Below, in pieces: positions 24,338 to 55,049 of a DNA stretch of 64,000 nt. The notes below the pieces were generated by a model. The model searched no databases, was not told where the DNA came from, and saw nothing but the letters and a program-made list of their open reading frames with translations. The translations under genes were made by a program, and so were the position numbers. Within the stretch, counting starts at the first letter, position 1; each line of letters starts with the position of its first letter. This DNA is from Epithemia pelagica. Its lineage: Eukaryota; Protista; Bacillariophyta. Location of the stretch: positions 2,294,001-2,358,000 of the forward strand of contig OX337229.1 of assembly GCA_946965045.2 (NCBI GenBank), in the 5' to 3' direction.

Positions 24338-24351
24338 GATTAACAGTCTCA
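24338..24351 (+). promoter_or_regulatory. Primer-binding site complementary to a tRNA-Asn(GUU) anticodon arm (nt 27-40)
   Basis: GATTAACAGTCTCA; the reverse complement TGAGA-CT-GTT-AA-TC has anticodon stem-loop geometry. Confidence 0.75.
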
Positions 24352-30400: not shown

Positions 30401-31190
30401 ATGTCAATGGTTGGTGCTACACAATGGTTAGTCACACTTGGCCGATTCCATGTAGCAATTGCTGTAAACGCATTATCTTCATACCGTGTTGCCCCCAGAA
30501 TTGGACACATGGATCGCATGAAACGTCTCTATGGATACGTCAAGCATTTTCAAGATGGAGCTATAAGAGTCAGGACAGGTATTCCTGATTATAGTGAACT
30601 CAAAGGAGAAGAACATGATTGGTTGAACTCCATATATGGAAATATTGATGAAGAACTTCCTCAAGACATGCCGACGCCGTTAGGAAAGATGGTCAGGATT
30701 TCTGCATTCTTTGTGGCAAATCTATATCATGACCTCATCACAGGACGTGCAATGACCGGTGTGCTGATGTTTGTCAACAAGACCCCTGTAGATTGGTACT
30801 CCAAGAAACAAAGTACTGTCGCCACTGCGACGTTCACTTCAGAGTTCATAGCATGACGTACTATGACTGATCAAGTTCTGGATCTTCAATACACGCTTAG
30901 GATGTTGGGAGTCCCTCTAGATTACCACACCTATGCATTTGGAGACAACAAGTCTATTATTACCTAGTCGACAGTGCCTGAATCACAGCTGACAAAACGT
31001 TGGAACGCCCTAGCTTTCCATCGAGTCCGTGAAGCCGTCGCAAGTGGGATCCTCAAGTTATATCACATTCCAGGAGCTGAGAACCCATCTGATGTTCTTA
31101 CCAAGTTCCTTGGATATCAACAAGCTTGGCCTCATCTCAAAGCTTTGTTGTTTTGGATGGGTGATACCGCCGACATTTCCCCGAAGGGGA
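27428..31190 (+). pseudogene. pol: Copia A pol (IN-RT-RNase H) with premature stops at about 30854 and 30964
   Basis: VATDT, LISDNAK, HHQHQNFAER, KSRFVAGGH, DVGNAYL, KALYGLK, YVDDLL and ENPSDVLTK motifs. Confidence 0.92.
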
Positions 31191-31191
31191 G

Positions 31192-31770
31192 TAATACCTT
31201 GAACACCTATGTTGGCTATATCCTCCAATAGGTAGTTCTATAGTCATGAAGAGTCCCGGAAAGTACGCGGCAGATCAATCGCATATAGCCTAGATTCCTG
31301 AATGAATCTAGATTAGGCACGATTGAGTCACGAAGATCTATTCACTCCTAATTTATGTATACTCCACGATCGAACTAGTCCTATGTCTCATAGGCTATGT
31401 TATATTTATATTCTCCAAGATCTAATCGCGGATTGAGGCATATCAACCGCGCGTAAAGAGTCGCAACGGATAGTCTACGGCGAACTATTACATCTAAACT
31501 ATATATGCACCTCTAGGTGATATGGGCCTGTGCCGATGACCCTAAACGGCGATCTTTTCCGTCTAGAAGCCTTTTACACCTCGATCCAAGATCCAGGATC
31601 ACCTTAATGGGAACCTGGGATCGAAAGGATCCAATCTAGAAATGCACTTCATGTAATCACAATATTTTATCATCAACTATTCGAAAGCCTCTATCTTATC
31701 GTAATTATACCGTCTCCATCGTGTGTGTTTTGTTACACCCTATCTAACCTCCCTTCCTTCCAGCTTGTCA
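31192..31770 (+). repeat. 3' LTR of copia A (579 bp; 23-bp deletion relative to the 5' LTR)
   Basis: Matches the 5' LTR apart from the missing CGCTGGACTTAACCGTATCGCGC and scattered substitutions. Confidence 0.93.
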
Positions 31771-32763
31771 GTATAATTGTTGGGCCATGTTTTCCATACG
31801 TCGTCTGGTGTGTGGACTGTCGCGGTTTGTTTGCTTGTGTATGATCTGATTTCGGTGGGTCCAAAGCTCTTTACTGGTGTACCAGAAGTGCGCTATAAGG
31901 GTCGGGGCCCACGGTGGTGGCGGGTGTTTTTGTTTGGTGATATGGGGGTGATCGTGGAGAAATTGAGATTGTGCATGTGCCATTCGCGGGGAAGGAACCC
32001 GCGAAAGATCAGTATGGCACCGTAGTCGTTCAAATTGTCATCGGGAGAAGTTAAGGCTTGGGGAGAGAATAGGGCATCCACGCAATCCAAAATATGTTGG
32101 TGCAAATCTGGTGCTGTGTGTTAAGTTCTGAGGCGCTCGTCAAGTTCCTGCCGAAAGCCGTCGCGCCAAGTCTGGTAACGTCTGCATAAGTACAGATGGT
32201 GTTGAGTTTCGTCCTGTGGGCAACACGGGCATTGGGCGGAGATGGGTTCGTAGCGGGCGAGTCGTGAATTTGTAGGTAACCATCCGGCAAGCAGTTAAAC
32301 AAAGAAACGGACGAGAAATCTCTGTTTGTTTGGCTGCTTGTTCGAACGAGTGCCAGTCGATAAGTGCTTGCTCGTTCGGTTGCCAACCAAATTTATGTTG
32401 AAAATATGATGCCATGGTTTTTCCGGGAAGAATTTTCCGGAGTGTCTTCAATTCATCGTCGGTATGGGGTCCATAGGCTTGAGTAACAAGGCGGACTTTG
32501 CCATGAGGAAACAAGAAAAAGAGCGGACTGCCGCCGTCAGGTTGTCGATCCAAAGCGTAAGTAGCCAACGCGTCTGCGATAACATTGAGTTGGGCGGGTC
32601 TTGGGAGAAAAGTGTAGCTGACCTGCTGATCCTGATGGCCAGTGACGTGTTCGAAGGTGATGTAATACGGAAATTTGCGGAGTTTGGCGAAAATCTCCAT
32701 GTATAAGTCTATGTCATTGCGGGTGTAGACAGACGAGTACCACTCATTACCGTAGTAGGAATA
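31771..32763 (-). pseudogene. LINE RNase H and C-terminal region
   Basis: DIDLYMEI...ITFEHVTGHQD...LNVIADALA, and FWYTSKELWTHRNQIIH. Confidence 0.85.
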
Positions 32764-32867
32764 CTTCACGGTATGACTCGTCGGGCACGTGTCTTGTCGG
32801 GCATTTCTCCCGACTAGCCGGGCGCCTGACGAGAAAGGACTGAAAAATACAGGGGAGTATTCTGCTT

Positions 32868-32895
32868 ACTCCATACCTAGATATGCAGGTAGTTC
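32868..32895 (+). repeat. Left inverted repeat of the YR element
   Basis: ACTCCATACCTAGATATGCAGGTAGTTC; 27/28 match to the reverse complement of 44357-44384. Confidence 0.85.
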
Positions 32896-33556
32896 CGACC
32901 ACCCGCCATATTTAATAGACAGGACATGTCCGTTGATGAAATTTGGAAGTCGCACAGGAAATTTTCGTCTCTAAGTAATTTTAAAACCTTCCGTTCCTCG
33001 GATTATATAGGCCCCAGTCCCCAGAGATCTCGTCGACCTCCCTTTCCTCTCGATCCGGAAATCAGGAAGGAAGACCGACAGCAATGACATTACCATTCCA
33101 AGTGGCTCTCTTCCTATAGAATAGTGTTTGATTGGTGTGTATAATAGCATGAACATCATTGATTTGGTCTCGGAGTCTGATTCTGAGTCTTCGGACTCGT
33201 CAACTTCCTACATGTACCTCTTTGACGAACCCGAGAACATGAACAATTGGGAAGGAAGGTGGGTTGAGCGGATTGATCTTTGCACTGGGAGCTCAGAGGA
33301 GCACAGTGACTCCTCTGACTCCTGGATGCTCAAAAGGTCGAGCAAACTGTAAGTGTTTGTTTGATTGTCGTATTTGTTCTTGCTCGTTGGCCCGTTTTTC
33401 GTCAATTTCGACAATGGTCGTCTTCCTTTTCGCGTCGAAATCTTCCCGGTCGCACTTACCAATTCAAATTTCCTTCGACCGTCACACCGATCCTCATTCT
33501 TCCTGTTATTTCTCATTTCTCATTTGTTGTGTCATATGATAAGCAGAAGGAAGCTC

Positions 33557-33796
33557 TGAATAAAAACTGACGGCCAGACGCAAAATACGGCTTGCAACAA
33601 TCAAACTATCAGAAATTATGATGACTAAACTAGGGGTGCCCTTTGGGGGCAAATCGCTCACGTAGGGGCCAAATAGCGACCACGGTACCCACTAGCGAAC
33701 ACATAACTAGGGGCCGGGCGATGCCAGGCGGTGCGTAGCGAGGCATGGCGAGGCCCTTCGTAGGTTACAAAGGGGGCGCCCGTGATTATTTATTTA
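33557..33796 (-). repeat. 3' LTR of copia B-
   Basis: Direct repeat of 40726-40965; reads TAAATAAA...TTTATTCA in element sense. Confidence 0.95.
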
Positions 33797-33918
33797 GTCC
33801 CCGCGAACAAAATCGGGGTGGGCAACTTCGTTTAGTTCGTCATGTCAGCAGAGGCCGGTCCAGTACGTCGGACTATTCTTCAAAAGGGGGCGATCCCATT
33901 TTGGATCTAAAAGGGGTG

Positions 33919-36900
33919 CTACCACATGATACGTTGGGCCAGGAATCGCAATCGAGGTCCGGGTAGCAGTTTGGTTAGGATATCGGCAAGATTCGTTTCA
34001 CCTTCTTCCCATGCAATGCGCACGAGTCCAGCGGCTTGCGCTTCACGAGTCCGATGATAAGCAATTGCGTTGTGCTTCTTCTTTAGGACTGATTCCGGCT
34101 GCGTCGAGTTCTTAAACACAGATTCATTGTCGCAAAACACATTCGTCTCTCCATCCAACGGGATACCCATCATTCGCAACTTATACCGAAATGCTTCAAT
34201 CATTTCAATGGCAGTCTTCATCGCCACAAACTCACTGCCAAATGTAGACGTCTCAACAGTGTTTTGTCGTTTTGAATACCACATGATCGGTGCTCGTTGC
34301 AAGAACAGTAGGACTCCTGTTTGAGAGCGCCGTGTGACACGACATCCAGCATGATCAGCATCGACAAAGCAAGTCGTGGTGACAGCGTTTCCACGCGGTG
34401 CTGGTGCGTTTGGCGGAATTGGCTCGGCAGCATCAGGATAATACTCAGACCAATCCGGTCGGGTAAAACGTGACTCGTCGAAGTCAGGGGTTGTATCATC
34501 GAACACAATGGAGGATTTATCGTATTTCTTCAGATACGCAGAGATGTGTAACGTTTGCTCGAGATGTCCTTCTCGTGGATTCGCCATAAAACGGGACATA
34601 TGGGAGACTGCGGTTGTAATGTCGATACGACCGAGTTCAACAATCCAACGGAGAATACCAATCAGTCCTTGGTAATAGTTCGCACGTCTTGCGTCGAGTT
34701 CAGGAGTCGCATCCAATTCCGGGCGATATCCATCGGCGATCGGCGTCGTCACTTTGGACTTCAGCTTTTCTCCGGATTTCTCCAGTTCCGTTTCGACTTC
34801 AGCAAGAGCACGCTTACAATACTTGTCAGCGGACATGGCCCAACGATCGCGGTTCGACGGATCTTGCGTGTCGGGTATGGTATAACGCCGTATTTCGGAT
34901 CCCAAGTATTCGTCTGGTGGTTTGATACTGTCGGGCTTGATCGTATAGCGCCTCTGCAGGTCCTGCATCACGGTTTTGGGATCATGACTAACAATCAGCA
35001 GATCATCAATGTAGACCAAAACATACTCGTAATACTGGAACCCATCAGATGGTCGAGTGTTCGCTCGAAGCCATACGTCCGGATCAGCTTGACACATCTT
35101 AAATCCCATATCGCGGAGCGTTGCGGCGATGTGATCACGCCACCTTGCAGCAGAACTTTTGAGACCATATAATGCGCGCACTATCAGTGCGGGTTGTCCA
35201 ACCTTATCGGGTCCAAATTCGAGTCCCGCGGTGGTATAGGTCTTCTCTTTAGTCGGTGCGTTGAGATATGCGTTTTGCACGTCCCCGACGAGAACATCAA
35301 GACCATTTAGTGCAGCGATAGTAAAAGCAATGCGTACGCTATCGCGTGATACCACACTAGAATAGGTCGATTCTTTGGGTGGATCAGTTTTGTGGCCTCC
35401 GGCCACTAACCGTGCTTTTCGTCGCAGGTCTGATTTGATGTCAAAAACCATATGACAGGGAATATGCTTATATCCAGAAGGCACTTCGCCATCAGCTGGA
35501 AATTCGAAAGCAATGCCAACGTTCTTCATTTCTTTCTCAATAGCCTTACGCCAGAAGTCAGTGCCCGTTCGACGGTCAATCGCCAGAGCTTCTTCCACAG
35601 AGTGGGGCAACTCAATGCCATACTTGTGCGTTCGCTTCCAATAACGTGACTTAACCTTTTTGATAATGCGGTCTCGTTTGCGAAGTGCACGTGGCACCCA
35701 CCATGCGAAAGCAGGCTCTTTTGCGATGCCAGTGGATACTGCGTATTCGGCGGCTTCAATCATATTTCCATTCTTGACGTCTTTGAGCGGCAGCCAAACA
35801 GTCGATTGATCGGACAGTTCACATTGCAATTCCCAGCCTTTCGTTGTGTGGTGTGATGTGCCGTCAAGGAACGATGCGTCTGTTCGCTTAACTGCGGTCT
35901 CATCACTGCGGTGTCCCACAATGGCTTTCAATGTGTTGAACGCATTACCCTCCGGGTCAACTTGCGAATACAGATTCTCTGCGATCATATTGGTTGCATA
36001 CGACTCGACCGATCCATCCGGAAACTGTACATCGTAGTACCGGGTATCAAGGATTGGGTTGGCGTCGCGCTCACCAATAGGTCGCCCATGAGCATCTTTC
36101 GTGCGTCCAATGATTTTCGCTCGAGCGCTTTCACCTCCTCGCGGCAGCATGACTTCAGCGGTGAGATATTCGTCTAGTTCCTCCGGCGTGTACGCGTCGG
36201 ATTCCAGGGCTTCGGCCTCTGGGAACAAGGGCTCTAGAAGTTCACCTTCGTCAAGGAGGTCTGGGGGTGGATCGCTCCCAGTTGTGCCATCAGATGGCGG
36301 CTCATTCATTTGCGTTTGAATAGCGACATCATAGTCCAACAACTGCTGATGAATCGTCGGATTCTTCAGGTCGTCTTCCGGAATGGCCCACACATCTTTC
36401 CGCGTGACATGATTGCCCTCTTGCGTTAGGATTTCATAGGCCATATCATCGGTGCAATCATCGGCTAAACCCAACCATCGGCCAATCAGTCTTTTTTCGA
36501 AGGGAAACTGTGCCATGGGCATGCGATAATACACCGGCTGATAGAATTGGAACATGGCTAATGGAGAGATGTCTGGCGTTGAGCCAATTACATGCTCGAA
36601 CGGTGTACGTCCATCTAATTCAGGGATATCGGATGCCGTGAGTTGCCGTACGTGTGAGCACCATTTAAGAGCATAGCTCCATAAACGTCGTGGTGCGCCG
36701 GTTGTCCTCATAATCTTGACAACTCCCTTCTTTAGTTCACGAATGCTCGCTTCGGCGGCGTTCTGCCATGGACTATAAGGAACCGTTTTCTCCATCTTTA
36801 TGCGGTACTCGTTGCATATTTCACGGGACTTCCCTAGGAACAATTCTCGGGCACCATCAGATACCATTGTTTGGGGAATCCCTACATTGTGAATCAAAGA

Positions 36901-38154
36901 CATCAATCCTTCAGGATGTTGCTTTTTCGACTTCCAGGGATAAACGTGGTCGAATCCTTTGCCGTCTGTAAAGATCGAGGCGCCCGTGTCCCCGTTCAGT
37001 GATACTTCCTTGGCAAACATCTCGTCCGAGAACCAACGGCCTTTCACATTAGGGAATTTGAGCCACGGTGCCTTCTTATGGACCTTTCGCTCAGATGGGA
37101 TTAATACGTTTCGTACTCCAGCCTGCGTCGTCACTTTAAGCGTATTCTTCGCTTTGGGTAAACCAATGCCCCAACGTTGTGACAGTACGGCTGCGTCAAG
37201 CACTCCCTTTCCAGCAGGATCGGCTGGGGAAGACTCGTTAGCAGTCTTGATCATGTACAGCCGACGTTCACGTTTGTCCTCCGGGACTACATCAGGCTCC
37301 TCCTTCTCTGGATGAACAGTGACCGTCGCTATTAAGCGTTCGTACAGGTCGTCGCCTTGTGCGTCGGCGTCCAGATCGGGTGATGGATTGGCAAAAGCAT
37401 GCTGGTACGTTCGCACTGCTTTGATGAGTCGTGGAATGGAGGATGCGGCAATCGAATTCGGATCGCCATTGCGAACGACAGTAGCGGCAGCTACACCCAG
37501 TTTCTCCTCCGCGTCCGCAAAGGCGGTAGAACGAGGTTGCCATGGGCTATCGGCAGTTAGCACAACTTGTGGCAAGTGTTCCAGCTCGTCAGAAGTGGGT
37601 TTGCGAGTGGTGAAACCACTTATCACACCAGCCATGGTGAGCGGGATAGTGAGATCGGCATCCGATACGTGGATACTATGCGTGCTGTGCGGGTCAAACT
37701 GTTTAGGTACGTTGTTGACAACGATGCCATGGGCACGCATCTGGTTCGGACAGAGTAACGAACTGCCCATACGGTCCCCTAAAAACAATGCTTGGTGGAT
37801 AACAAGCAAGTAAGACTGGTTTTCGCTGTCAGTCCAGACAGTGGCAACAGTCGCAATAGGGACATTGGTCAGCGGGTTATATTCCTCCGCGAACGGATGC
37901 ACACTGATATAGCGGTGGGCTTCGGAGAGCATTACGAAGTCTCTTCCCACGGCACAGGTGTCCGCATGTGAGTCCAACTCACAGGTGAGCTCAATGGTCT
38001 CAACACCATATTCGTCGGTGTTCATAGCACATAGACGATGTGCGAAACGTTCAGAATAACTATAATGGGTGCCTACATGTGTATTCGATTGAACAATAAG
38101 ATTCGTTTTATCAAGTTTTACTGCTTCGGCAGCGGATACACAGGGCACACTCCA
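33919..38154 (-). CDS. pol: Copia B- pol (PR-IN-RT-RNase H), in frame with gag after UGA
   Basis: CELDSHADTC, WFSDEM, MVSDGARE, PYSPWQNAAE, KARLVAGGH, DVQNAYL, RALYGLK, YIDDLL, FVDADHAG and NLADILTK motifs. Confidence 0.95.
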   Translation of the reverse strand, partial: WSVPCVSAAEAVKLDKTNLIVQSNTHVGTHYSYSERFAHRLCAMNTDEYGVETIELTCELDSHADTCAVGRDFVMLSEAHRYISVHPFAEEYNPLTNVPIATVATVWTDSENQSYLLVIHQALFLGDRMGSSLLCPNQMRAHGIVVNNVPKQFDPHSTHSIHVSDADLTIPLTMAGVISGFTTRKPTSDELEHLPQVVLTADSPWQPRSTAFADAEEKLGVAAATVVRNGDPNSIAASSIPRLIKAVRTYQHAFANPSPDLDADAQGDDLYERLIATVTVHPEKEEPDVVPEDKRERRLYMIKTANESSPADPAGKGVLDAAVLSQRWGIGLPKAKNTLKVTTQAGVRNVLIPSERKVHKKAPWLKFPNVKGRWFSDEMFAKEVSLNGDTGASIFTDGKGFDHVYPWKSKKQHPEGLMSLIHNVGIPQTMVSDGARELFLGKSREICNEYRIKMEKTVPYSPWQNAAEASIRELKKGVVKIMRTTGAPRRLWSYALKWCSHVRQLTASDIPELDGRTPFEHVIGSTPDISPLAMFQFYQPVYYRMPMAQFPFEKRLIGRWLGLADDCTDDMAYEILTQEGNHVTRKDVWAIPEDDLKNPTIHQQLLDYDVAIQTQMNEPPSDGTTGSDPPPDLLDEGELLEPLFPEAEALESDAYTPEELDEYLTAEVMLPRGGESARAKIIGRTKDAHGRPIGERDANPILDTRYYDVQFPDGSVESYATNMIAENLYSQVDPEGNAFNTLKAIVGHRSDETAVKRTDASFLDGTSHHTTKGWELQCELSDQSTVWLPLKDVKNGNMIEAAEYAVSTGIAKEPAFAWWVPRALRKRDRIIKKVKSRYWKRTHKYGIELPHSVEEALAIDRRTGTDFWRKAIEKEMKNVGIAFEFPADGEVPSGYKHIPCHMVFDIKSDLRRKARLVAGGHKTDPPKESTYSSVVSRDSVRIAFTIAALNGLDVLVGDVQNAYLNAPTKEKTYTTAGLEFGPDKVGQPALIVRALYGLKSSAARWRDHIAATLRDMGFKMCQADPDVWLRANTRPSDGFQYYEYVLVYIDDLLIVSHDPKTVMQDLQRRYTIKPDSIKPPDEYLGSEIRRYTIPDTQDPSNRDRWAMSADKYCKRALAEVETELEKSGEKLKSKVTTPIADGYRPELDATPELDARRANYYQGLIGILRWIVELGRIDITTAVSHMSRFMANPREGHLEQTLHISAYLKKYDKSSIVFDDTTPDFDESRFTRPDWSEYYPDAAEPIPPNAPAPRGNAVTTTCFVDADHAGCRVTRRSQTGVLLFLQRAPIMWYSKRQNTVETSTFGSEFVAMKTAIEMIEAFRYKLRMMGIPLDGETNVFCDNESVFKNSTQPESVLKKKHNAIAYHRTREAQAAGLVRIAWEEGETNLADILTKLLPGPRLRFLAQRIMW

Positions 38155-40230
38155 TCAGGAGGAATTAGACATGTCGGCAGACTTGTCAGAGACATTGGGG
38201 TCACGGACATCGAATTCAAGATCGGCGGAATAACGACCGCACACATTACGCCTTCGCTCTGCGGCAGCCAATTGTCCATTGGCAAGCATAGTGTATTTCA
38301 AAGCTTCGTCGAACACTTCCGTGTGCTCGGCTAAGCGTCTGCACACATGGTACATTTGGCGCTCTTCTCGTTCATAGCCTGACATTTTAGACCAGCGCCA
38401 AGACCAAATTGGACTATTGTGTACAATAGTGTCGATCTCTTCGCGGAAGCTTCCTTTCAGCATACTTTGGTCATGCTTGGTAAGTGAGCGGACGTTGCGA
38501 GGCCCTTCAGCAAACTTGCCTTTGACCGGTAGCGGCAGCTTTACAAAGATGTCGCCGTGTTCCGGGACTGGTGGGATGGTCATATGACTCATATCAGGAC
38601 GTCCGTCCTCTTCCCATTGCCACATCGGTGGATAGGTCTCGTATTCCCCCATGGGGCGAGTACGTACGGATTTGACGGACGCAGATCCGGGTTCGTTCGG
38701 TTGTGCTTTAGCCTTATGCGCGAAACGTCCAAAGCTGTTGCCAGCTGAGGACTTTGTCGGCTGCGAATCATCTTCGGATGATTTTGCAGGTGAGGCGGAA
38801 GCGCGGAACTTAGAGTGCTTGTCTGGCGACGGTACGTTGTCAACAGAGGAGTCAAGCAAGTTCTCGTCTACTTCCATAATGACCGATACGTTGGTCTTAG
38901 CCTCAGGCTTAGCGTCGTCATCAATGTCTACTGAGATTGCGTCCTCAGCAGTACTCCCATGCGACGTTTTCGACCTCTTCGACGATGCGTTGGAAGAGTC
39001 GTCTGTGGTGACGGATCCAAGCTTCCGCTTTTCTTTGCGCTCTTTGCGAAGAGCCTGGACTTGTTTGCGTTCGTCCTCCGTCAGGTCTGCCCATTCGTCG
39101 GCATCGTAGTGACCAGCATGAACGCGGTCCTTCTTTTTCTTGCTCTTTTTCTGATTGCGCCCTTTGCCCTTTCCTTTGCTTGGGGTGGTACTAGCAGCAG
39201 CGATCTTGCGAGAGTCGTCCTGCGTTTCGGTTTTGGCGGCACTGTGCACAGTCAAGAAGTATTGCTGGCACGCTTCAAAGTTCTCCAACTTCTCCTGGTC
39301 ACCGTTGACGACGGTCTTTGCTTGGACGAGTGTCGGATCGGTGATCCCATTCATGAAATCGGTCACTTTTTTCGTTTTCGCGACCGTTTCGCCAAGCTCT
39401 TCCAGGGTGTTGTGCGCATGTTGGTGACGGTGAATGTAGTCATGGAAGCGGTACTTCCCTCGTCCTGTAAACTTAGCATTTGCGATCTGCGCATAAGCCT
39501 GTTTCTTGCGCAGGATGCTCGCGGCCTGTCCAGTGGCTTGCCGCTTGACGGTTAGGTAGGCCTCACGGCCGTCCTTCGATTTCGCGTGCGTTTTAGCAAA
39601 CGTCCATGCCGGACCATCGTAGATAAGAGGGTAGTACAGCTCATACACTCTGCGTCGGTCGGCTTTGTACTGGTCCCCCTCATGACGAGTGGTCGCGACT
39701 AGGTCGTCGTCAATGCAGTCGTAATCGGCGGTTAGTGCGTCGTCCGGTACGTCGGACTCCTCACGCAATACGTAGGTGAGCGGCACTCCCGTTGTCGGAT
39801 TACGGTGCTGACCCAAGTACGTGCGCCACATTCCGTCGTGACGTTCCCAATCGGCAAGGTTCGTTAGCCTTTTGGGTGGTACTGGGTCATCCTGACCATC
39901 AGTGGTGGTGGCATTCGCGAGTTCCGTTACGCGTTTCATCCACTTGGTGATTACGTCACCAGTATAAGCACCAGCATCAAGGTCCTGACCACGGACAGAA
40001 CGGTATTCCAACCACATTCGGAAGCCAAGGAACTTGAGGTTGAATTGGTAGGGTAGGGTGACGCCGTCAGGTAGGTTCTTGGCTAGTGTCTTCAGCATGG
40101 GCTTTACTTCGTTGATAGGAAACTCCAGGAACTGATCCGTTGTCGTGAAGCCCTGTTGCGTTAGGTACCCAACGGTAGCATTGTCGTAGCCACAGCGGCC
40201 CAGTGCAGTACGGAAGGCATTTGCGGCCAT
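38155..40230 (-). CDS. gag: Copia B- gag, 691 aa, with an extended C-terminal domain
   Basis: GVPLTYVLR...DNRRV-like region, YHRHQHAHNTL-like region and YDADEWADLT motif typical of CoDi gag. Confidence 0.9.
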   Translation of the reverse strand: MAANAFRTALGRCGYDNATVGYLTQQGFTTTDQFLEFPINEVKPMLKTLAKNLPDGVTLPYQFNLKFLGFRMWLEYRSVRGQDLDAGAYTGDVITKWMKRVTELANATTTDGQDDPVPPKRLTNLADWERHDGMWRTYLGQHRNPTTGVPLTYVLREESDVPDDALTADYDCIDDDLVATTRHEGDQYKADRRRVYELYYPLIYDGPAWTFAKTHAKSKDGREAYLTVKRQATGQAASILRKKQAYAQIANAKFTGRGKYRFHDYIHRHQHAHNTLEELGETVAKTKKVTDFMNGITDPTLVQAKTVVNGDQEKLENFEACQQYFLTVHSAAKTETQDDSRKIAAASTTPSKGKGKGRNQKKSKKKKDRVHAGHYDADEWADLTEDERKQVQALRKERKEKRKLGSVTTDDSSNASSKRSKTSHGSTAEDAISVDIDDDAKPEAKTNVSVIMEVDENLLDSSVDNVPSPDKHSKFRASASPAKSSEDDSQPTKSSAGNSFGRFAHKAKAQPNEPGSASVKSVRTRPMGEYETYPPMWQWEEDGRPDMSHMTIPPVPEHGDIFVKLPLPVKGKFAEGPRNVRSLTKHDQSMLKGSFREEIDTIVHNSPIWSWRWSKMSGYEREERQMYHVCRRLAEHTEVFDEALKYTMLANGQLAAAERRRNVCGRYSADLEFDVRDPNVSDKSADMSNSS

Positions 40231-40711
40231 GGTTCAAGGGTCGGATGAAGGGTAGGAGGGTAGTAGAAGGTCAAACGGATGGCAAGGGAAGGCTTGTTCT
40301 TGTGCAGAAATTTGCAATTGTGATGGGAAGAGCGAATTTCTGTGAGCCAACAATCTGCGAGTGAATCGGCGAGTAGTCGTCCGGCGATTCCGCGAGCGAG
40401 CGAGCTAGCGATCGGCGAATCCGCGAGTCGGCGAACCGGCGATTCCGCGAGCAAGCAGGTACGTGTCAAAAGCCAGCAGGCTTATATAATTGAGTCGTAC
40501 GGAGCGCGTGGATGGACGGTCCACGTGTACGAGCACGTGCACGGTACGTTGTGCAGTCGCAAGTCACAAATTAGCGAGTGGGTCCCACAGTGACAAAAAC
40601 AAGTCACAGAGATGACGCAAGCGAGCGAGTGACGAAGCCGCTTAGCGCGAACAACTCCCGAGCGTTGATCAGGCGCTTGCCGTCCGGCGAACAGTGGGGA
40701 AACAACAGACT

Positions 40712-40725
40712 TGGGTCTGATAAAC
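40712..40725 (-). promoter_or_regulatory. PBS of copia B- (tRNA-Ile anticodon arm)
   Basis: TGGGT-CT-GAT-AA-AC abuts the 5' LTR. Confidence 0.75.
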
Positions 40726-40965
40726 TGAATAAAAACTGACGGCCAGACGCAAAATACGGCTTGCAACAATCAAACTATCAGAAATTATGATGACTAAACT
40801 AGGGGTGCCCTTTGGGGGCAAATCGCTCACGTAGGGGCCAAATAGCGACCACGGTACCCACTAGCGAACACATAACTAGGGGCCGGGCGATGCCAGGCGG
40901 TGCGTAGCGAGGCATGGCGAGGCCCTTCGTAGGTTACAAAGGGGGCGCCCGTGATTATTTATTTA
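40726..40965 (-). repeat. 5' LTR of copia B-
   Basis: 240-bp direct repeat of 33557-33796. Confidence 0.95.
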
Positions 40966-40972
40966 GCTCGCC

Positions 40973-43928
40973 ATGAAGACTCGCAACGCTAACAAAGCCG
41001 CTGCCGCCGCCGCAAACAAGGAGAACGCACCGCCTCATCGTCCTGCTGCTGTAAAGACTCGTCAATCCAGCAAGGCTGCGTCGACTGTTTGCAAGAAAAG
41101 CAACCCTTCGTCATCGCTCCTCCGGAAACGATCCGTCAACATCCCTGTTCCAAAACAGGGGAACAAGAAACCTGCACCGGTTCCTCTGTCCGAACCTTCT
41201 CAGAACTCGTAAGAAGTCACTGACGATTGTTGTTTCTTTGTGTAGTGTCATGTTCCCATCTCACTCTGTTTGATTGTTCGTATTGCAGGGATGCTGTTCT
41301 TCCTGTTGGAACTTTGGAAGCTCCGAATGTGGAATCCATTGCTGTGGCCCCTCAGTACGTTGACTTTGCTTTGCATTGGTGGATTGCTTTCATGGTTCGT
41401 CCAGTTCTAATTGTCTCGTTGATTGATGTGCTTTGCAGGGCGTCCATGCAAGTGCCTCCCAATGGAACCTCCGTTCCGCCTCGCAATGGAACCTCTGTTC
41501 TGCCTCCCAATGGAACCTCCGTTCCCATTGCTCCGAATGTGGCCCCTCAGTACGTTGGTTTTGACTTGCAGTGGATTGTCTGCATGTTTCTTCCTGTTCC
41601 AACTGTCTCGTTGATTGCTGCGTTTTACAGGGCGTCGACGCAAGTGCCTCCCAATGAAACGTCCGTTCCCATTGCTCCCTCTCTAAAGATGGCTGCCCAA
41701 GCTGCGTCTTCTCGGTCCACCCTTGTTGTCGACGAAGCAACAGGGCGGGTGACCTTTGACTTCCTTTCGAGCAACTCGCTACCCGAGGTAGTCAATACCC
41801 CCGACGATCTTGAGGCATGGGCCTCTTATGCCAGGATCTCGAACGAGCGCGTCTATGGAGACGGGGCTCGCAACGTAAATTTCTCTGACCTGTCAATGAA
41901 CACGGCAGGGTATGAGCGGGAGAAGGCAAGAACATTTGAACGCTTTCTGAACATCCTGGCCCGACATCAAGACTTACACAAACTCACCAAAGTCATCGCC
42001 GATCCTGATAACCCATCGAAGCAAACCCTCCGTCTTTTTACGTTGTTGCGAGGATACAAGACCCCGGAGAAAGCAAAGTGTCTGAATCTTGTATTTTACC
42101 TTTTGGTCTCGAATCTGTACACCAAGGCCGGGCAGGTGTATCAACCGAACGCTTTGAAAAAGATGCTGGACCATGTGTTCTCTGTGCTTCATACCAACGG
42201 CATTCAGTACGGGAGTCTGGATCTTCAAAACCTGCCCCGTTCATACCATGCTTACTGCAAAAAGCAGTTTGAAGAAGAGTCGCGCCCGAAGAAAGCCAAG
42301 ATTGTGCAGAATGACGAGTACCTGTTTCGGAACAAGGCAAACCCGAAACAAAATCCTTTTACGGTCCCCATCGACCTTTTACGACTAGTAGTTTATAAGT
42401 TCCAACGTGATTTCGGTCCACGTGGTACCATCGAGGTAAGTACTGTCTGATTGTTGGTTTGGTTTCTTCGGACATATGATTTCTCACGTTTTTTGCCTCG
42501 TTTCTTACAGACCTGTAAAGTTAGAGTTGCAGACTTAGTCCACATCCCCGCACTTCCAGAGGAGTATGGCTCGTTGGCGGGCCTACCCGCGTACAAACTC
42601 AAAGAGTATAGCCGCGAGAAATGCTCGAAGCTGTCATTGAATAACCCCACTCTTGACGCTGAAGACGGGCGCGAGCTCAACATGATCGTCAACAACCCCG
42701 ACGACCCGTGGTCCACGTACAAATTACTCCAGTACTGGATCGAGCACGCCCTACCTCCTGGCTGGACGGGTCTACTGTTTCTCAATATTGCTTCGGAGAA
42801 GGAACGCAAGGCTCGTCCCTCTCCTGCGAATGACAAGTGGTGGGCTGGCACCATGTTGGTGCGAGACACGTCGAAAGAAGCCATGGCTCGCTACAACAAA
42901 GCAGTCGCAAATGGTTTCACAGGACCGCCTCCGACACGCCCAATCGGTCAACTCGGCAAGAAGTGGCCGAACGAAAATGCCAAGCTCCTATTCAAGAGGT
43001 GCGGCTTAGAAGACTGGAAACAAACGACTGCGCGGACGGGCCGCCGTACCGGAATCTCCAACGTGGCACAATCTGGTGCTCCACAAAAGATCGTCAACAA
43101 ATTCGGACGCCACAAGACTGATGAGGCGAACTTCGCATACCAAGAGTTTGGACCGGAATCCTACGCCGCGGTCTTAAAAGCAAACTGGCATAAGGATGCC
43201 TCGCCTGTCACAGTCAAACAAGGTAAGTCCATTTTTTGGTTGATTGCTATCGTTGTTTCTTCTCTCATTCTTCTGTTTTCTTTTCAGAACCCGTGGAAAC
43301 GAAACCAAAGTCTCACCACGAGAAGAAGGCGCTGTCTGCAGTTTTTCAACCATTGACTCTAGAAGAAGATGATGATTTGACGGATTCTCTCTTCAAAGGC
43401 TTTTACTGGGAGGCTTTTGGCACCAACGGCCAACAAGCCTCGAACATAATTGAGTCACAGGCTCCTCCTCCAAAGAAGAAGCCGCCGAAGTCAGTTGTCG
43501 CCTCGCACATGCCTCAATGCAACACCCCCACTTCCTCGTCATCGTCATCGTCATCCATGTGTTCTCCACACGGTCGGTTCCGCTCGAATGGTATGGTTGC
43601 TCCTACCTTCATCCCACAACAACAACAACCCTCGTCTTTCATCGTAACACAACAAGAACAACCAGCACTTGCTTGAATGCCGACGATGTTGCAACCCACC
43701 TACCCTACACAGCAGCCCATGATGAATGGGTTTATGCAACAACCGTACATGCATACGACCTCAATGCAGTTTGGGATGGTTGCTCCGAACTACGCACCAC
43801 AGCCTTCCATCATGCCGACCACCATGCAACAAACCATGATCCAGCAGCCCCATTTTCAACCTGTTCAGTTCCAACAACCCTCCCATCCACGCAAGTACAA
43901 GAAATCCCACAAGAAGAGGTCTTCTTGA
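40973..43928 (+). CDS. Intron-containing tyrosine recombinase (Crypton/DUF3504-like); in-frame TGA at 43674-43676 before the Q/P/M-rich tail
   Basis: Predicted exons 40973-41208, 41289-41354, 41439-41549, 41631-42435, 42511-43222 and 43288-43676(43928); all GT-AG junctions keep the frame. Catalytic-type motifs are FGPRGTIE (R), RTGRRT, GRHK and AY (Y at 43138). Confidence 0.75.
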
Positions 43929-44356
43929 TGGGTTAGTTGGTGAGTTTTCGTCACCTGCTGCTTGTTTCTTTCGTTTCTTCATGTTTATCTCACAAACTTT
44001 TTCTTATTTGCACAGACTTACAGTGCTGCTACTGTCCACTATCAGTATTCTCTACTTCTTCCAACAGTCGCCCTAGTTGCTGGTATGGTGAGTAACCATG
44101 GCTGTATTTTCGACCTTCCTCTGTCTTGTTTGACTAACCAATTGTCTATTGCATTCACAGTGATCCCATTATTCAATGGTTGATCCTTCTAGAACTTAGG
44201 TATCGTCGTTGCCATCGTTGCGTCCATTTTTCGTGGTGCGCTCTTTCCCCTTGGTTTGCTCGCCCGGCGTGTTTGTGCGCGAATCGCGCGAATTTTCGGT
44301 AATTACTACCTTCCGCTCGTACAATAATTTCGTACTCTACTATAAAAATGTGAGCA

Positions 44357-44384
44357 GAACTACCTGCATAGCTAGGTATGGAGT
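44357..44384 (-). repeat. Right inverted repeat of the YR element
   Basis: GAACTACCTGCATAGCTAGGTATGGAGT. Confidence 0.85.
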
Positions 44385-44571
44385 TAGTGCCGCAACTCTT
44401 CAAACCGTTGAATGAAGCTGAGGCTGTCTGTATGGATGGTCAAGGTGTGAAGAGGATTACCCAGGAATCCGTAGTATCGCAGAAAGTGCTTAAGAAAACA
44501 GATCAGGGTCCATATAGACCAGGCTTCAGCTCAGAACGACGACATGGGCCATCCCAATACTGGCCGCAAAC
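44385..44571 (-). pseudogene. LINE RNase H middle segment
   Basis: FLKHFLRYYG...LTIHTDSLSFIQRFEELRH. Confidence 0.7.
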
Positions 44572-44811
44572 TGAATAAATAATCACGGGCGCCCCCTTTG
44601 TAACCTACGAAGGGCCTCGCCATGCCTCGCTACGCACCGCCTGGCATCGCCCGGCCCCTAGTTATGTGTTCGCTAGTGGGTACCGTGGTCGCTATTTGGC
44701 CCCTACGTGAGCGATTTGCCCCCAAAGGGCACCCCTAGTTTAGTCATCATAATTTCTGATAGTTTGATTGTTGCAAGCCGTATTTTGCGTCTGGCCGTCA
44801 GTTTTTATTCA
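44572..44811 (+). repeat. 5' LTR of copia B+
   Basis: TGAATAAA...TTTATTCA, an 8-bp terminal inverted repeat. Confidence 0.95.
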
Positions 44812-44825
44812 GTTTATCAGACCCA
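44812..44825 (+). promoter_or_regulatory. PBS of copia B+ (tRNA-Ile anticodon arm)
   Basis: GTTTATCAGACCCA directly after the LTR's CA. Confidence 0.75.
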
Positions 44826-45306
44826 AGTCTGTTGTTTCCCCACTGTTCGCCGGACGGCAAGCGCCTGATCAACGCTCGGGAGTTGTTCGCGCTAAGCGGC
44901 TTCGTCACTCGCTCGCTTGCGTCATCTCTGTGACTTGTTTTTGTCACTGTGGGACCCACTCGCTAATTTGTGACTTGCGACTGCACAACGTACCGTGCAC
45001 GTGCTCGTACACGTGGACCGTCCATCCACGCGCTCCGTACGACTCAATTATATAAGCCTGCTGGCTTTCGACACGTGCCTGCTTGCTCGCGGAATCGCCG
45101 GTTCGCCGACTCGCGGATTCGCCGATCGCCAGCCCGCTCGCTCGCGGAATCGCCGGACGACTACTCGCCGATTCACTCGCAGATTGTTGGCTCACAGAAA
45201 TTCGCTCTTCCCATCACAATTGCAAATTTCTGCACAAGAACAAGCCTTCCCTTGCCATCCGTTTGACCTTCTACTACCCTTCTACCCTTCATCCGACCCT
45301 TGAACC

Positions 45307-47382
45307 ATGGCCGCAAATGCCTTCCGTACTGCACTGGGCCGCTGTGGCTACGACAATGCTACCGTTGGGTACCTAACGCAACAGGGCTTCACGACAACGG
45401 ATCAGTTCCTGGAGTTTCCTATCAACGAAGTAAAGCCCATGCTGAAGACACTAGCCAAGAACCTACCTGACGGCGTCACCCTACCCTACCAATTCAACCT
45501 CAAGTTCCTTGGCTTCCGAATGTGGTTGGAATACCGTTCTGTCCGTGGTCAGGACCTTGATGCTGGTGCTTATACTGGTGACGTAATCACCAAGTGGATG
45601 AGACGCGTAACGGAACTCGCGAATGCCACCACCACTGATGGTCAGGATGACCCAGTACCACCCAAAAGGCTAACGAACCTTGCCGATTGGGAACGTCACG
45701 ATGGAATGTGGCGCACGTACTTGGGTCAGCACCGTAATCCGACAACGGGAGTGCCGCTCACCTACGTATTGCGTGAGGAGTCCGACGTACCGGACGACGC
45801 ACTAACCGCCGATTACGACTGCATTGACGACGACCTAGTCGCGACCACTCGTCATGAGGGGGACCAGTACAAAGCCGACCGACGCAGAGTGTATGAGCTT
45901 TACTACCCTCTTATCTACGATGGTCCGGCATGGACGTTTGCTAAAACGCACGCGAAATCGAAGGACGGCCGTGAGGCCTACCTAACCGTCAAGCGGCAAG
46001 CCACTGGACAGGCCGCGAGCATCCTGCGCAAGAAACAGGCTTATGCGCAGATCGCAAATGCTAAGTTTACAGGACGAGGGAAGTACCGCTTCCATGACTA
46101 CATCCACCGTCACCAACATGCGCACAACACCCTGGAAGAGCTTGGCGAAACGGTCGCGGAAACGAAAAAAGTGACCGATTTCATGAATGGGATCACCGAT
46201 CCGACGCTCGTCCAAGCAAAGACCGTCGTCAACGGTGACCAGGAGAAGTTGGAGAACTTCGAAGCGTGCCAGCAATACTTCTTGACTGTGCACAGTGCCG
46301 CCAAAACCGAAACGCACGACGACTCTCGCAAGATCGCCGCTGCTAGTACCACTCCAAGTAAAGGAAAGGGCAAAGGGCGCAATCAGAAAAAGAGCAAGAA
46401 AAAGAAGGACCGCGTTCATGCTGGTCACTACGATGCCGACGAATGGGCAGACCTGACGGAGGACGAACGCAAACAAGTCCAGGCTCTTCGCAAAGAGCGC
46501 AAAGAAAAGCGGAAGCTTGGATCCGTCACCACAGACGACTCTTCCAACGCATCGTCGAAGAGATCGAAAACGTCGCATGGGAGTACTGCTGAGGACGCAA
46601 TCTCAGTAGACATTGATGACGACGCTAAGCCTGAGGCTAAGACCAACGTATCGGTCATTATGGAAGTGGACGAGAACTTGCTTGACTCCTCTGTTGACAA
46701 CGTACCGTCGCCAGACAAGCACTCCAAGTTCCGCGCTTCCGCCTCACCTGCAAAATCATCCAAAGATGATTCGCAGCCGACAAAGTCCTCAGCTGGCAAC
46801 AGCTTTGGACGTTTCGCGCATAAGGCTAAAGCACAACCGAACGAACCCGGATCTGCGTCCGTCAAATCCGTACGTACTCGCCCCATGGGGGAATACGAGA
46901 CCTATCCACCGATGTGGCAATGGGAAGAGGACGGACGTCCTGATATGAGTCATATGACCATCCCACCAGTCCCGGAACACGGCGACATCTTTGTAAAGCT
47001 GCCGCTACCGGTCAAAGGCAAGTTTGCTGAAGGGCCTCGCAACGTCCGCTCACTTACCAAGCATGACCAAAGTATGCTGAAAGGAAGCTTCCGCGAAGAG
47101 ATCGACACTATTGTACACAATAGTCCAGTTTGGTCTTGGCGCTGGTCTAAAATGTCAGGCTATGAACGAGAAGAGCGCCAAATGTACCATGTGTGCAGAC
47201 GCTTAGCCGAGCACACGGAAGTGTTCGACGAAGCTTTGAAATACACTATGCTTGCCAATGGACAATTGGCTGCCGCAGAGCGAAGGCGTAATGTATGCGG
47301 TCGTTATTCCGCCGATCTTGAATTCGATGTCCGTGACCCGAATGTCTCTGACAAGTCTGCCGACAAGTCTAATTCCTCCTGA
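45307..47382 (+). CDS. gag: Copia B+ gag, 691 aa
   Basis: Near-identical to 38155-40230. Confidence 0.9.
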   Translation: MAANAFRTALGRCGYDNATVGYLTQQGFTTTDQFLEFPINEVKPMLKTLAKNLPDGVTLPYQFNLKFLGFRMWLEYRSVRGQDLDAGAYTGDVITKWMRRVTELANATTTDGQDDPVPPKRLTNLADWERHDGMWRTYLGQHRNPTTGVPLTYVLREESDVPDDALTADYDCIDDDLVATTRHEGDQYKADRRRVYELYYPLIYDGPAWTFAKTHAKSKDGREAYLTVKRQATGQAASILRKKQAYAQIANAKFTGRGKYRFHDYIHRHQHAHNTLEELGETVAETKKVTDFMNGITDPTLVQAKTVVNGDQEKLENFEACQQYFLTVHSAAKTETHDDSRKIAAASTTPSKGKGKGRNQKKSKKKKDRVHAGHYDADEWADLTEDERKQVQALRKERKEKRKLGSVTTDDSSNASSKRSKTSHGSTAEDAISVDIDDDAKPEAKTNVSVIMEVDENLLDSSVDNVPSPDKHSKFRASASPAKSSKDDSQPTKSSAGNSFGRFAHKAKAQPNEPGSASVKSVRTRPMGEYETYPPMWQWEEDGRPDMSHMTIPPVPEHGDIFVKLPLPVKGKFAEGPRNVRSLTKHDQSMLKGSFREEIDTIVHNSPVWSWRWSKMSGYEREERQMYHVCRRLAEHTEVFDEALKYTMLANGQLAAAERRRNVCGRYSADLEFDVRDPNVSDKSADKSNSS

Positions 47383-54859: not shown

Positions 54860-55049
54860 ATGATGTTCTTGTTTAGGAATACATGGGTCGCCCCAGGATT
54901 CATTCGATAAAATGTTGTTAGGGTAGTTAGGGAAGTCGTGGATGCTTGTCTGAATGATAGTGGGTGGGATGGATGGGTCTGGATCTGGTGGTGGTGGTGG
55001 TGATGGTGGTGGTGTACGAATCGAAAAGGAAGGAGACTCGGGTAGTCGC

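What the first reader, a model, noticed from the sequence alone, without database searches (positions are those of the whole stretch)
32764..44384. Tyrosine-recombinase DNA element with 28-bp inverted repeats inside a LINE
After removing B-, a ~4.2-kb insertion remains whose only recognisable gene is a five-intron YR, and it has 27/28-identical inverted repeats. Known Cryptons mostly have short direct repeats rather than long TIRs. Boundary model 1: 32764-44384 between TA dinucleotides, with the left repeat 104 bp internal (asymmetric ends). Boundary model 2: 32869-44383 flanked by TTA/TTA, inserted at the edge of a separate 103-bp hairpin-rich insert. GGTATG also occurs near both ends (32770, 44375), recalling the TATGG termini reported for CryptonS. 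This may be an undescribed stramenopile YR transposon architecture.
Basis: partly seen in the sequence, partly recalled or inferred. Interest (0 to 1): 0.8.

Follow-up and report, generated by a model that had tools for sequence, protein, structure and literature searches.

The report
Broken diatom Crypton with split-palindrome ends
This is a dead copy of a Crypton-type jumping gene, moved by a tyrosine recombinase, from a family whose two ends join into one long conserved DNA palindrome, which published Cryptons are not reported to have.

Summary
Four full copies and an empty-site comparison place the element at window 32752/32756-44387. Without the nested Copia (33557-40965) it is 4.2 kb.

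- **Gene:** its only gene has 7 exons and encodes a tyrosine recombinase. Pfam finds nothing exon by exon. Support comes from relatives that hit PF00589 or DUF3504, from a profile match to XerA that aligns RxxR, H and Y, and from an AlphaFold model (pLDDT 89) whose ten best structural matches are tyrosine recombinases or the DUF3504 protein QRICH1.
- **Repeat:** the 27/28 inverted repeat is real, but its left arm is internal. Intact copies start with a ~185-nt hairpin kept by compensatory changes. When the ends are joined, hairpin and repeat form one ~245-nt rod.
- **Insertion:** copies sit at (G)TAG(T), with TAG at both junctions.
- **Copy number:** the genome holds about 110-130 copies, mostly ~390-bp non-autonomous ones, including at least 8 head-to-tail pairs.
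- **This copy is dead:** Copia sits in exon 2, there is a premature TGA, and the left hairpin is rearranged.

I read it as a new variant of a known kind. The scan had already noted this family on other DNA of this genome.

The parts
32752..44387 (+). Whole composite: Crypton-type element plus the nested Copia. GTAG at 32752-32755 is target-derived or ambiguous; the element proper runs 32756-44387.
   Evidence: End comparison of 4 full copies. Empty-site paralogs of the host LINE show exactly GTAG between the flanks.
32753..32755 (+). Left copy of the TAG junction triplet (crossover core or 3-bp duplication).
   Evidence: TAG at the left junction in most of about 25 copies (12 of the 15 short ones). 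Position -4 is usually the target's G.
44385..44387 (+). Right copy of the TAG junction triplet, the end of the conserved ...GGAGTTAG terminus.
   Evidence: A 30-mer pattern for the right end occurs 112 times in the genome, control 0.
32756..32864 (+). Rearranged remnant of the left terminal hairpin. About 73 nt of the 5' arm are deleted, and a 32-mer (32773-32804) is inverted relative to three other copies.
32848..32902 (+). Internal stretch complementary to both ends. 32848-32868 pairs with the left terminus (32753-32772). 32865-32902 is the left arm of the inverted repeat and pairs with the right terminus.
44350..44387 (+). Right arm of the inverted repeat, which is also the right terminus.
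   Evidence: 33/38; core 27/28.
33149..33348 (+). Exon 1 (66 codons, acidic and Ser-rich).
   Evidence: 52-59% aa identity in other subfamilies and 37% in L075. GTAAGT donor at 33349.
33547..33556 (+). Start of exon 2, cut off by the Copia insertion.
   Evidence: The reading frame runs from exon 1 into 40970 onwards. The C8 copy is uninterrupted here.
33557..40965 (-). Nested Copia retrotransposon 'B-'. LTRs are 100% identical; target duplication is (A)GCTC.
   Evidence: (RVT_2).
40970..41208 (+). Rest of exon 2.
41289..41354 (+). Exon 3. It is part of a tandemly duplicated exon-plus-intron module.
   Evidence: D2, D6; frame check on the sequence.
41439..41549 (+). Exon 4 (PPNGTSV repeats).
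41631..42435 (+). Exon 5: N-terminal part of the recombinase. The candidate catalytic Arg-I sits in GPRG at 42421-42423.
42511..43222 (+). Exon 6: the catalytic domain. K37 at 42619-42621; R175 at 43033-43035 (in place of the usual His); R178 at 43042-43044; H201 at 43111-43113; Tyr210 at 43138-43140.
43288..43928 (+). Exon 7. The window copy has an in-frame TGA at 43674-43676 where the C8 sister copy reads CCA. The conserved Q/P/M-rich tail continues to 43928.
31759..32751 (-). Host LINE-like ORF, downstream flank.
   Evidence: paralog ORF aa 494-828.
44388..44565 (-). Host LINE-like ORF, upstream flank. It is cut again by Copia 'B+' from 44566.
   Evidence: An APE endonuclease domain lies further upstream at 53945-55579.

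Best explanation
Window 32752-44387 is an inactivated copy of a Crypton-type DNA transposon, an element whose only enzyme is a tyrosine recombinase (YR).

Shown:
- Exact ends.
- A 7-exon YR gene with an R...K...RxxR...H...Y set.
- TAG at both junctions and a (G)TAG(T) target.
- No long terminal duplication.
- A family of at least 38 YR-coding copies and about 110-130 end-bearing copies.
- An end architecture that is conserved and co-varies with the recombinase.

That architecture is as follows. The first ~185 nt form an imperfect hairpin studded with tandem G.A mismatches. The 38 nt next to it are the inverse of the right terminus. When the right and left ends abut, they form one ~245-nt palindrome, with the join about 30 bp from its base.

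Inferred:
- The YR excises the element as a circle by recombining the two TAG-containing ends.
- It re-inserts the circle by exchanging strands within TAG(T) between the circle junction and a similar target, as proposed for Cryptons.
- The palindrome is the recombinase's recognition site.
- Insertion next to resident ends, or resolution of multimers, gives the head-to-tail pairs.

This particular copy cannot be autonomous. A Copia sits in exon 2, a TGA truncates the C-terminal tail, and half of the left hairpin is lost.
For: **Ends.** Searches show identical termini with unrelated flanks. One search shows that the empty site keeps exactly GTAG.

**YR identity.**
- A profile of exon 6 finds 164 relatives. 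Of 50 scanned, 10 hit PF00589 and 1 hits DUF3504.
- The Gonium protein P0116 matches my profile at positions 151-219, on the same residues that PF00589 matches at E 1.4e-17.
- A 60-sequence profile has XerA (5hxy) as its best PDB hit. The hit is weak (E 0.019) but aligns RxxR, H and Y.
- The AlphaFold model has pLDDT 89.3. All ten chains with Z of 5 or more are YRs or the DUF3504 protein QRICH1; XerA scores 8.2 and Cre 8.1.
- The protein-language-model neighbours are eukaryotic Phage_integrase, DUF3504 and ALOG clusters.

**Movement as DNA.** Introns are kept in all copies. A transcript-derived Entomoneis protein is colinear across the exon 5/6 junction.

**Palindrome.**
- It has 62 pairs, 12 of them with compensatory changes. 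No shuffle out of 500 reached this, and slid controls gave 5 or fewer.
- Fold z-score is -8.2.
- A natural head-to-tail junction folds into one rod at -66 kcal/mol, z -8.3.
- The same layout occurs in another assembly, in an element with 41% protein identity and no detectable DNA similarity in the end regions.

**Copy number and pairs.**

**Defects of this copy.**
Against: - No Pfam model hits the window's exons, nor a read-through paralog ORF, even at E 10.
- Structural Z scores of 8 are middling in absolute terms.
- The usual His of the R-H-R-Y tetrad is Arg throughout the family.
- Only 3-4 bp are shared between element and target, which is short for a YR overlap region. A 3-bp target duplication made by another enzyme would look identical.
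- No circle junction or excision footprint was observed.
- CryptonS membership could not be tested by phylogeny, because no reference sequences were on hand.
Confidence: 0.85

Rival explanations
1. A non-autonomous DDE-type TIR element, with a 3-bp TAG target duplication, captured a recombinase gene and is moved in trans by an unseen transposase.
For: TAG at both junctions is formally compatible with a 3-bp duplication. An inverted repeat exists.
Against: The left repeat arm is internal in every copy. The true ends are unlike each other. No transposase ORF lies in the 4.2 kb. The ends and the YR diverge together across at least 4 subfamilies at 41-96% aa identity, and in another assembly. A chance capture would not give that pattern.
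Confidence: 0.03
2. A DIRS-like retroelement derivative that lost its reverse transcriptase. The internal stretch complementary to both ends would be a DIRS-style internal complementary region, and the element would move through RNA and cDNA using RT supplied in trans.
For: The geometry resembles the DIRS ITR-plus-ICR layout (DIRS layout as described in PMC13465315). The structure is strand-asymmetric, which fits a single-stranded intermediate.
Against: Six introns are retained in the gene in the full copies examined. Passage through spliced RNA should remove them. No RT was seen in the 4.2-4.4-kb units that I read. The ~390-bp derivatives keep only the ends.
Confidence: 0.05
3. The same Crypton, but its recombination site acts as a folded single strand or extruded cruciform, as integron attC or CTX-phage attP do for their tyrosine recombinases, rather than as ordinary duplex DNA.
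For: Tandem 5'-GA/5'-GA internal loops are conserved at 5-6 positions in all 7 subfamily representatives. In paired columns, top-strand G.T wobbles outnumber A.C mismatches (a G.T wobble on the other strand) by 15 to 4. Purine-purine mismatches outnumber pyrimidine-pyrimidine by 14 to 0. The top strand folds 6 kcal/mol better than the bottom strand.
Against: The sequences are related, so the counts are not independent events. The GGAGGG and GTCGGG boxes could simply be two kinds of protein-binding site in duplex DNA. Inverted protein sites also co-vary. There is no direct evidence for single-stranded intermediates.
Confidence: 0.25
4. A domesticated host recombinase gene that happens to lie between unrelated repeats.
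For: The gene is intron-rich, and a relative is expressed in Entomoneis.
Against: The unit as a whole sits at unrelated loci with precise common ends. It interrupts a LINE ORF between two codons. It has many non-autonomous derivatives.
Confidence: 0.02

Closest known systems
CryptonS elements of stramenopiles (Kojima & Jurka 2011, PMC3212892), including CryptonS-1_PTri of the diatom Phaeodactylum tricornutum (4671 bp, 4 copies, terminal repeat CTGTAAG; supplement read)
   Same: A DNA element encoding only a tyrosine recombinase, in a diatom-like host. Size is 4-5 kb. There is a short shared sequence at both junctions and no long duplication. The protein has a long C-terminal extension. The core of the right terminus, GT(T/A)AG, resembles CTGTAAG.
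   Different: Published Cryptons are said to have no inverted repeats and no structured ends (PMC3212892; restated in 2026 in PMC13465315). This family has a ~185-nt covarying hairpin plus a 38-nt repeat, which complete one palindrome across the joined ends. The shared core is only TAG(T), against 5-7 bp. There are about a hundred ~390-bp derivatives and head-to-tail pairs. Arg replaces the His of the catalytic tetrad. Phylogenetic placement was not tested.
DIRS retrotransposons (inverted terminal repeats plus an internal complementary region)
   Same: An internal stretch is complementary to both termini. The enzyme is a tyrosine recombinase, and a circular intermediate is proposed.
   Different: No reverse transcriptase, RNase H or methyltransferase. 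Introns are retained. The element is 4.2 kb.
Integron attC sites with IntI, and CTX-phage attP with XerCD
   Same: A tyrosine recombinase paired with an imperfect palindrome whose mismatches are strand-specific.
   Different: Those are bacterial systems with 60-150-nt sites. The resemblance here is by structure only. Use of a single strand was not shown.
Non-autonomous Cryptons (CryptonI-1N1_RPro in Rhodnius, CryptonS-1N1_ALai in Albugo, CryptonA-1N1_OL in medaka; PMC3212892)
   Same: Short derivatives that keep only the two ends of an autonomous Crypton.
   Different: Here the retained parts are exactly the palindrome components: the left 216 bp and the right 85 bp.

Membership tests
Tyrosine recombinase superfamily (PF00589-type catalytic domain) | Significant match to the family HMM | tested here: not met
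No Pfam hit for the exons or for the read-through paralog ORF at E up to 10.
Tyrosine recombinase superfamily (PF00589-type catalytic domain) | Homology shown through intermediates or a profile | tested here: met
   Profile relatives hit PF00589 (10 of 50; best E 1.4e-17, on the same residues as my profile) and DUF3504. The best PDB hit of the profile is XerA, weakly, at E 0.019.
Tyrosine recombinase superfamily (PF00589-type catalytic domain) | Catalytic fold | tested here: met
   Model with pLDDT 89.3. All ten chains with Z of 5 or more among 48,161 are tyrosine recombinases or QRICH1, aligned across residues 1-229. Foldseek's top rows are the same families, but weak, at E 0.04 or more.
Tyrosine recombinase superfamily (PF00589-type catalytic domain) | R-H-R-Y catalytic tetrad with a Tyr nucleophile | tested here: inconclusive
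   Arg-I (GPRG), K37, R178, H201 and Y210 are conserved, and RxxR, H and Y are aligned to XerA. The tetrad His is Arg (R175) in the whole family. Activity was not assayed.
Crypton (YR-only DNA transposon) | The recombinase is the only enzyme: no RT and no DDE transposase | tested here: met
   ORF and Pfam survey of the 4.2 kb. Sister copies of 4.2-4.4 kb have the same content.
Crypton (YR-only DNA transposon) | Multi-copy, with precise common ends and short shared junction bases instead of a long duplication | tested here: met
   TAG at both junctions, and an empty site with a single GTAG.
Crypton (YR-only DNA transposon) | No terminal inverted repeats or structured ends (as described in the literature) | tested here: not met
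   A 38-nt repeat plus a ~185-nt covarying hairpin. This is a descriptive trait of known Cryptons rather than a mechanistic requirement.
Crypton (YR-only DNA transposon) | Excision as a circle and re-integration by the recombinase | not testable with these tools
   Head-to-tail pairs show what the joined-end sequence would be. No free circle can be observed in an assembly.
CryptonS group | Clusters with CryptonS recombinases in a phylogeny | not tested
Named relatives are diatom proteins from Entomoneis and Cylindrotheca.
CryptonS group | 5-6-bp terminal direct repeats, mostly TATGG | tested here: not met
   The shared core is TAG(T). TATGG lies 9 nt inside the right end only. The diatom member CryptonS-1_PTri also departs from the rule, with CTGTAAG.
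DIRS | Encodes RT/RNase H and moves through RNA | tested here: not met
   No RT in the element. Introns are retained in copies.

The most novel reading that the evidence does not exclude
The split palindrome is a structure-specific recombination site used on one strand, either as a folded single strand or as an extruded cruciform. The internal arm would hold the two termini together, as a DIRS internal complementary region is proposed to do, and the tandem G.A mismatches would mark the active strand. This would be a eukaryotic counterpart of attC/IntI or CTX/XerCD recombination, and the first defined recombination site for any Crypton.
Probability: 0.25. Interest if true: 0.8.

Novelty: new variant of a known kind. 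Interest (0 to 1): 0.55.

Why it matters
Cryptons are the least understood class of eukaryotic DNA transposons. No transposition assay exists, no recombination site is defined, and reviews up to 2026 describe them as lacking structured ends.

This family offers three things that would make the Crypton mechanism directly testable:
- exact ends;
- a long covarying palindrome that is completed only when the ends are joined;
- a recently amplified set of ~390-bp derivatives that keep just those parts.

The tests would be circle-junction PCR, binding and cleavage of a defined site, and a mini-element assay.

The strand-specific G.A pattern also raises the question of whether a eukaryotic tyrosine recombinase uses folded DNA as its substrate.

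The window's own copy is only a broken witness of the family. Intact copies lie elsewhere, for example on contig C8 at about 1437140-1441572.

Tried and rejected
**Searches that gave little or nothing**
- Pfam on each exon and on a 593-aa read-through paralog ORF: no hit.
- phmmer and a 6-sequence profile against PDB: nothing useful.
- First AlphaFold run, on the paralog ORF with a shallow mixed alignment: pLDDT 44, discarded.
- Word-index protein search: it found only this genome's own copies.
- Foldseek: the right families, but E of 0.04 or more. I therefore ran the wide VIA search.
- Rfam on 31500-45500: no family.
- Two metagenome scans for related loci: empty.

I could not read the 3.5-4-kb metagenome contigs that carry intronless relatives, or check them for joined ends.
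The 41-47% identity paralogs, other than L075, could not be fetched.

**Left out**
- All protein work was done exon by exon or on natural ORFs.
- A phylogeny against CryptonS/F/A, DIRS and Starship captains was not built, for lack of reference sequences.

**Readings rejected**
- TA or TTA duplications.
- The GGTAT/TATGG direct-repeat model of the ends: the bases outside those motifs are conserved in every copy.
- The hairpin as a separate insert.
Full report
**1. What is at the coordinates**

Repeat analysis of 31500-45500 shows three things:
- a 242-nt direct repeat, 100% identical (33556-33797 and 40725-40966);
- a long inverted match to a second copy of the same retroelement, starting at 44566;
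- a 38-nt inverted repeat (32865-32902 against 44350-44387), 33/38 identical with a 27/28 core.

The direct repeats are the LTRs of a Copia element on the minus strand, with RVT_2 in its 1409-aa ORF. Its target duplication is (A)GCTC. A 97% identical sister of the surrounding element on contig C8 lacks this Copia and reads straight through the site.

The host sequence on both sides is one LINE-like ORF on the minus strand. A 944-aa paralog ORF maps to window 52389-51982, 44626-44390, 32754-31759 and 23737-23375. An APE-type endonuclease domain lies upstream at 53945-55579. The 'inside a LINE' part of the finding therefore holds.

**2. True boundaries**

I compared the window with three other full copies (C8:~1437140-1441572, C7, and C8:~3228635-3233080).
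- Homology begins at GTAG|TAGGAATACTTCACGG, window 32752/32756.
- Homology ends at ...GGTATGGAGTTAG, window 44387.
- Flanks are unrelated in every case.
- Three uninterrupted paralogs of the host LINE have exactly four bases, (G/A)TAG, between the window's two flanks.

So one TAG was present before insertion and TAG now stands at both junctions. There is no other duplication.

**3. The gene**

GT-AG boundaries and reading frames give seven exons:

| Exon | Window coordinates |
|---|---|
| 1 | 33149-33348 |
| 2 | 33547-33556 plus 40970-41208 |
| 3 | 41289-41354 |
| 4 | 41439-41549 |
| 5 | 41631-42435 |
| 6 | 42511-43222 |
| 7 | 43288 onwards |

- Exon 1 is conserved at 52-59% aa identity in other subfamilies.
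- The Copia sits 10 nt into exon 2, so it breaks coding sequence and not an intron.
- The window has TGA at 43674-43676 where the C8 copy has CCA. The conserved Q/P/M-rich tail continues in frame to 43928.
- A transcriptome-derived protein of the diatom Entomoneis paludosa (P0012, 1027 aa) aligns to exon 5 up to its residue 498 and to exon 6 from residue 510. The offsets place the two exon ends on adjacent residues. This supports the intron between exons 5 and 6.

**4. Is it a tyrosine recombinase?**

*Direct Pfam scans.* They are blank for the exons and for a 593-aa paralog ORF (L075) that reads through its intron.

*Homologs.*
- A six-sequence profile of exon 6 found 164 proteins at E of 0.001 or better among 1.84 billion.
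- Of 50 scanned, ten hit PF00589 and one hits DUF3504.
- In the Gonium pectorale protein P0116, my profile (positions 151-219) and PF00589 (E 1.4e-17, model positions 106-169) match the same residues.
- P0149 passes the DUF3504 cut-off.
- Named relatives are diatom proteins of 858-1027 aa, with the domain at about 460-720. That matches the position expected from my exon model.

*Profile against PDB.* A 60-sequence profile has the archaeal recombinase XerA as its best PDB hit. The hit is weak (E 0.019). The alignment puts R175-x-x-R178 on H-x-x-R, H201 on the second His, and Y210 on the nucleophile.

*Structure.*
- AlphaFold with that alignment gives pLDDT 89.3.
- An exhaustive structural comparison puts only tyrosine recombinases, and the Crypton-derived DUF3504 protein QRICH1, at Z of 5 or more. 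The list is XerA 8.2, Cre 8.1, XerH, IntI, a staphylococcal integrase, Tn1549 Int, QRICH1, lambda Int (two entries) and an archaeal Xer. Type IB topoisomerases follow.
- The Z values are middling, but the list is homogeneous and spans the whole domain.

*Language-model neighbours.* They point the same way.

I conclude that the protein is a tyrosine recombinase of the Crypton/DUF3504 kind. It is too divergent for Pfam, and Arg replaces the tetrad His throughout the family.

**5. End architecture**

- In intact copies the first ~185 nt form an imperfect hairpin (-53.6 kcal/mol as DNA, z -8.2).
- Across seven subfamily representatives the consensus has 62 pairs, 95.9% paired. Twelve pairs carry compensatory changes. 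No shuffle out of 500 reached that, and slid controls gave 5 or fewer.
- Eight of the twelve lie in the outermost helix. There the terminal 20 nt pair with the stretch that abuts the left repeat arm.
- The left repeat arm therefore starts where the hairpin ends, and it is the inverse of the right terminus.
- A natural head-to-tail pair of short copies (L055) shows the consequence. Across the join, the right arm, the hairpin and the left arm fold into one ~245-nt rod (-66.2 kcal/mol, z -8.3), with the join about 30 bp from its base.
- The repeat arms also co-vary between subfamilies: GCAT/ATGC against ACAC/GTGT.

The structure is strand-asymmetric:
- 5'-GA opposite 5'-GA loops are conserved at 5-6 positions;
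- top-strand G.T wobbles number 15, against 4 A.C mismatches, each of which would be a G.T wobble on the bottom strand;
- purine-purine mismatches number 14, against no pyrimidine-pyrimidine ones.

These counts come from related sequences and are not independent events.

An element in a different assembly (L076, ENA ERZ21939226) has a recombinase 41% identical to exon 6, and its end regions show no detectable DNA similarity to this family's ends. It has the same layout: a hairpin at 3808-4006 (z -13.5) with the same loop pattern, then a 30-nt repeat arm at 4011-4040 matched at 7797-7826, beyond the gene.

**6. Family, target and activity**

- The genome holds at least 38 recombinase-coding copies at 32-96% aa identity.
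- The invariant hairpin core 20-mer occurs 133 times, and a 30-mer pattern for the right end occurs 112 times. Reversed-pattern controls give 0.
- Most copies are ~380-400-bp derivatives made of the left 216 bp plus the right 85 bp. These are exactly the palindrome parts.
- Junctions of 15 such copies and 10 full copies give the target (G)TAG, followed by T in 11 of 15 short copies. The left junction carries the target's base before TAG. The right junction carries the element's T. This places the exchange within TAG(T).
- At least eight head-to-tail pairs 375-390 bp apart share a single TAG. One pair joins two subfamilies, and one joins a short copy to a full copy.
- Many right ends are identical over 30 nt, which suggests recent amplification.

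**7. State of the window copy**

Three defects make it non-autonomous and probably immobile:
- the Copia in exon 2, whose LTRs are still identical, so the insertion is recent;
- the TGA at 43674-43676;
- loss of about 73 nt of the hairpin's 5' arm, together with inversion of a 32-mer at 32773-32804 relative to three other copies.

**8. Mechanism**

*Shown:* the anatomy, the junction rule, conservation of the ends together with the recombinase, and retention of introns, which argues for movement as DNA.

*Inferred, by analogy with the model proposed for Cryptons (PMC3212892):* excision as a circle by recombination between the two TAG-bearing ends, and integration by exchange within TAG(T) with a similar target. 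The palindrome would be the recognition site. Head-to-tail pairs would arise by integration next to a resident end or from unresolved multimers.

*Rivals:*
- A 3-bp duplication made by another transposase cannot be excluded from junctions alone. It is unlikely, because ends and recombinase diverge together.
- A DIRS-derived, RT-dependent origin is contradicted by the retained introns.
- A single-strand or cruciform substrate is an open and interesting possibility.

**9. Comparison and novelty**

The closest known elements are the CryptonS elements of oomycetes and Phaeodactylum. CryptonS-1_PTri is 4671 bp with termini CTGTAAG.

The literature I could search states that Cryptons lack inverted repeats and structured ends (PMC3212892; PMC13465315 of 2026). 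A split palindrome with covariation, a TAG core, and about a hundred short derivatives therefore look undescribed. I file this as a new variant of a known kind.

Earlier notes of this scan describe the same family on other pieces of this genome. Here I re-derived the ends, the hairpin covariation, the rod across joined ends and the G.A asymmetry independently. This window adds a degenerate copy, an empty-site proof of the TAG core, and the structural evidence for the recombinase.

Noticed in passing
window 23375-55579, minus strand: One LINE-like element with an APE endonuclease ORF is split into at least four pieces by three insertions: a Copia at about 23737-31759, the Crypton at 32752-44387, and Copia B+ from 44566 to about 51982. 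With the Copia nested in the Crypton, this is a three-level nest.
   Followed up: partly
window 41289-41700: An exon-plus-intron module of the recombinase gene is tandemly duplicated with a period of 192-195 nt (repeats D2, D6). It gives repeated ...APQ / AS.QVPPN.TSVP peptide units, each split by its own intron.
   Followed up: partly
L013:4306-4984 (G000 C8:1436305-1436983): The intact C8 sister copy is followed, about 60 bp beyond its right end, by a head-to-tail pair of ~390-bp non-autonomous copies. This points to clustering of family members.
   Followed up: partly
L023:~1715-1797 (G000 C20): The right end of a short copy abuts the left end of a full-length copy of another subfamily, sharing a single TAG. 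This is a heterologous head-to-tail junction.
   Followed up: partly
L075:993-2771: In a 41%-identical paralog (contig C17), the intron between the two recombinase exons is in frame and free of stops. The unspliced locus therefore reads as one 593-aa ORF with a Cys/Leu-rich insert.
   Followed up: partly
hits (P0022, P0062, P0064, P0074, P0149): Several intronless 400-570-aa relatives from metagenomes sit on contigs of only 3.5-4.0 kb, about one element length. These might be collapsed repeats or circles.
   Followed up: no
window 32773-32804: The 32-mer next to the hairpin tip is inverted in the window copy, and the deletion of the opposite arm lies beside it. The pattern looks like a fold-back or template-switch rearrangement at the palindrome.
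   Followed up: partly
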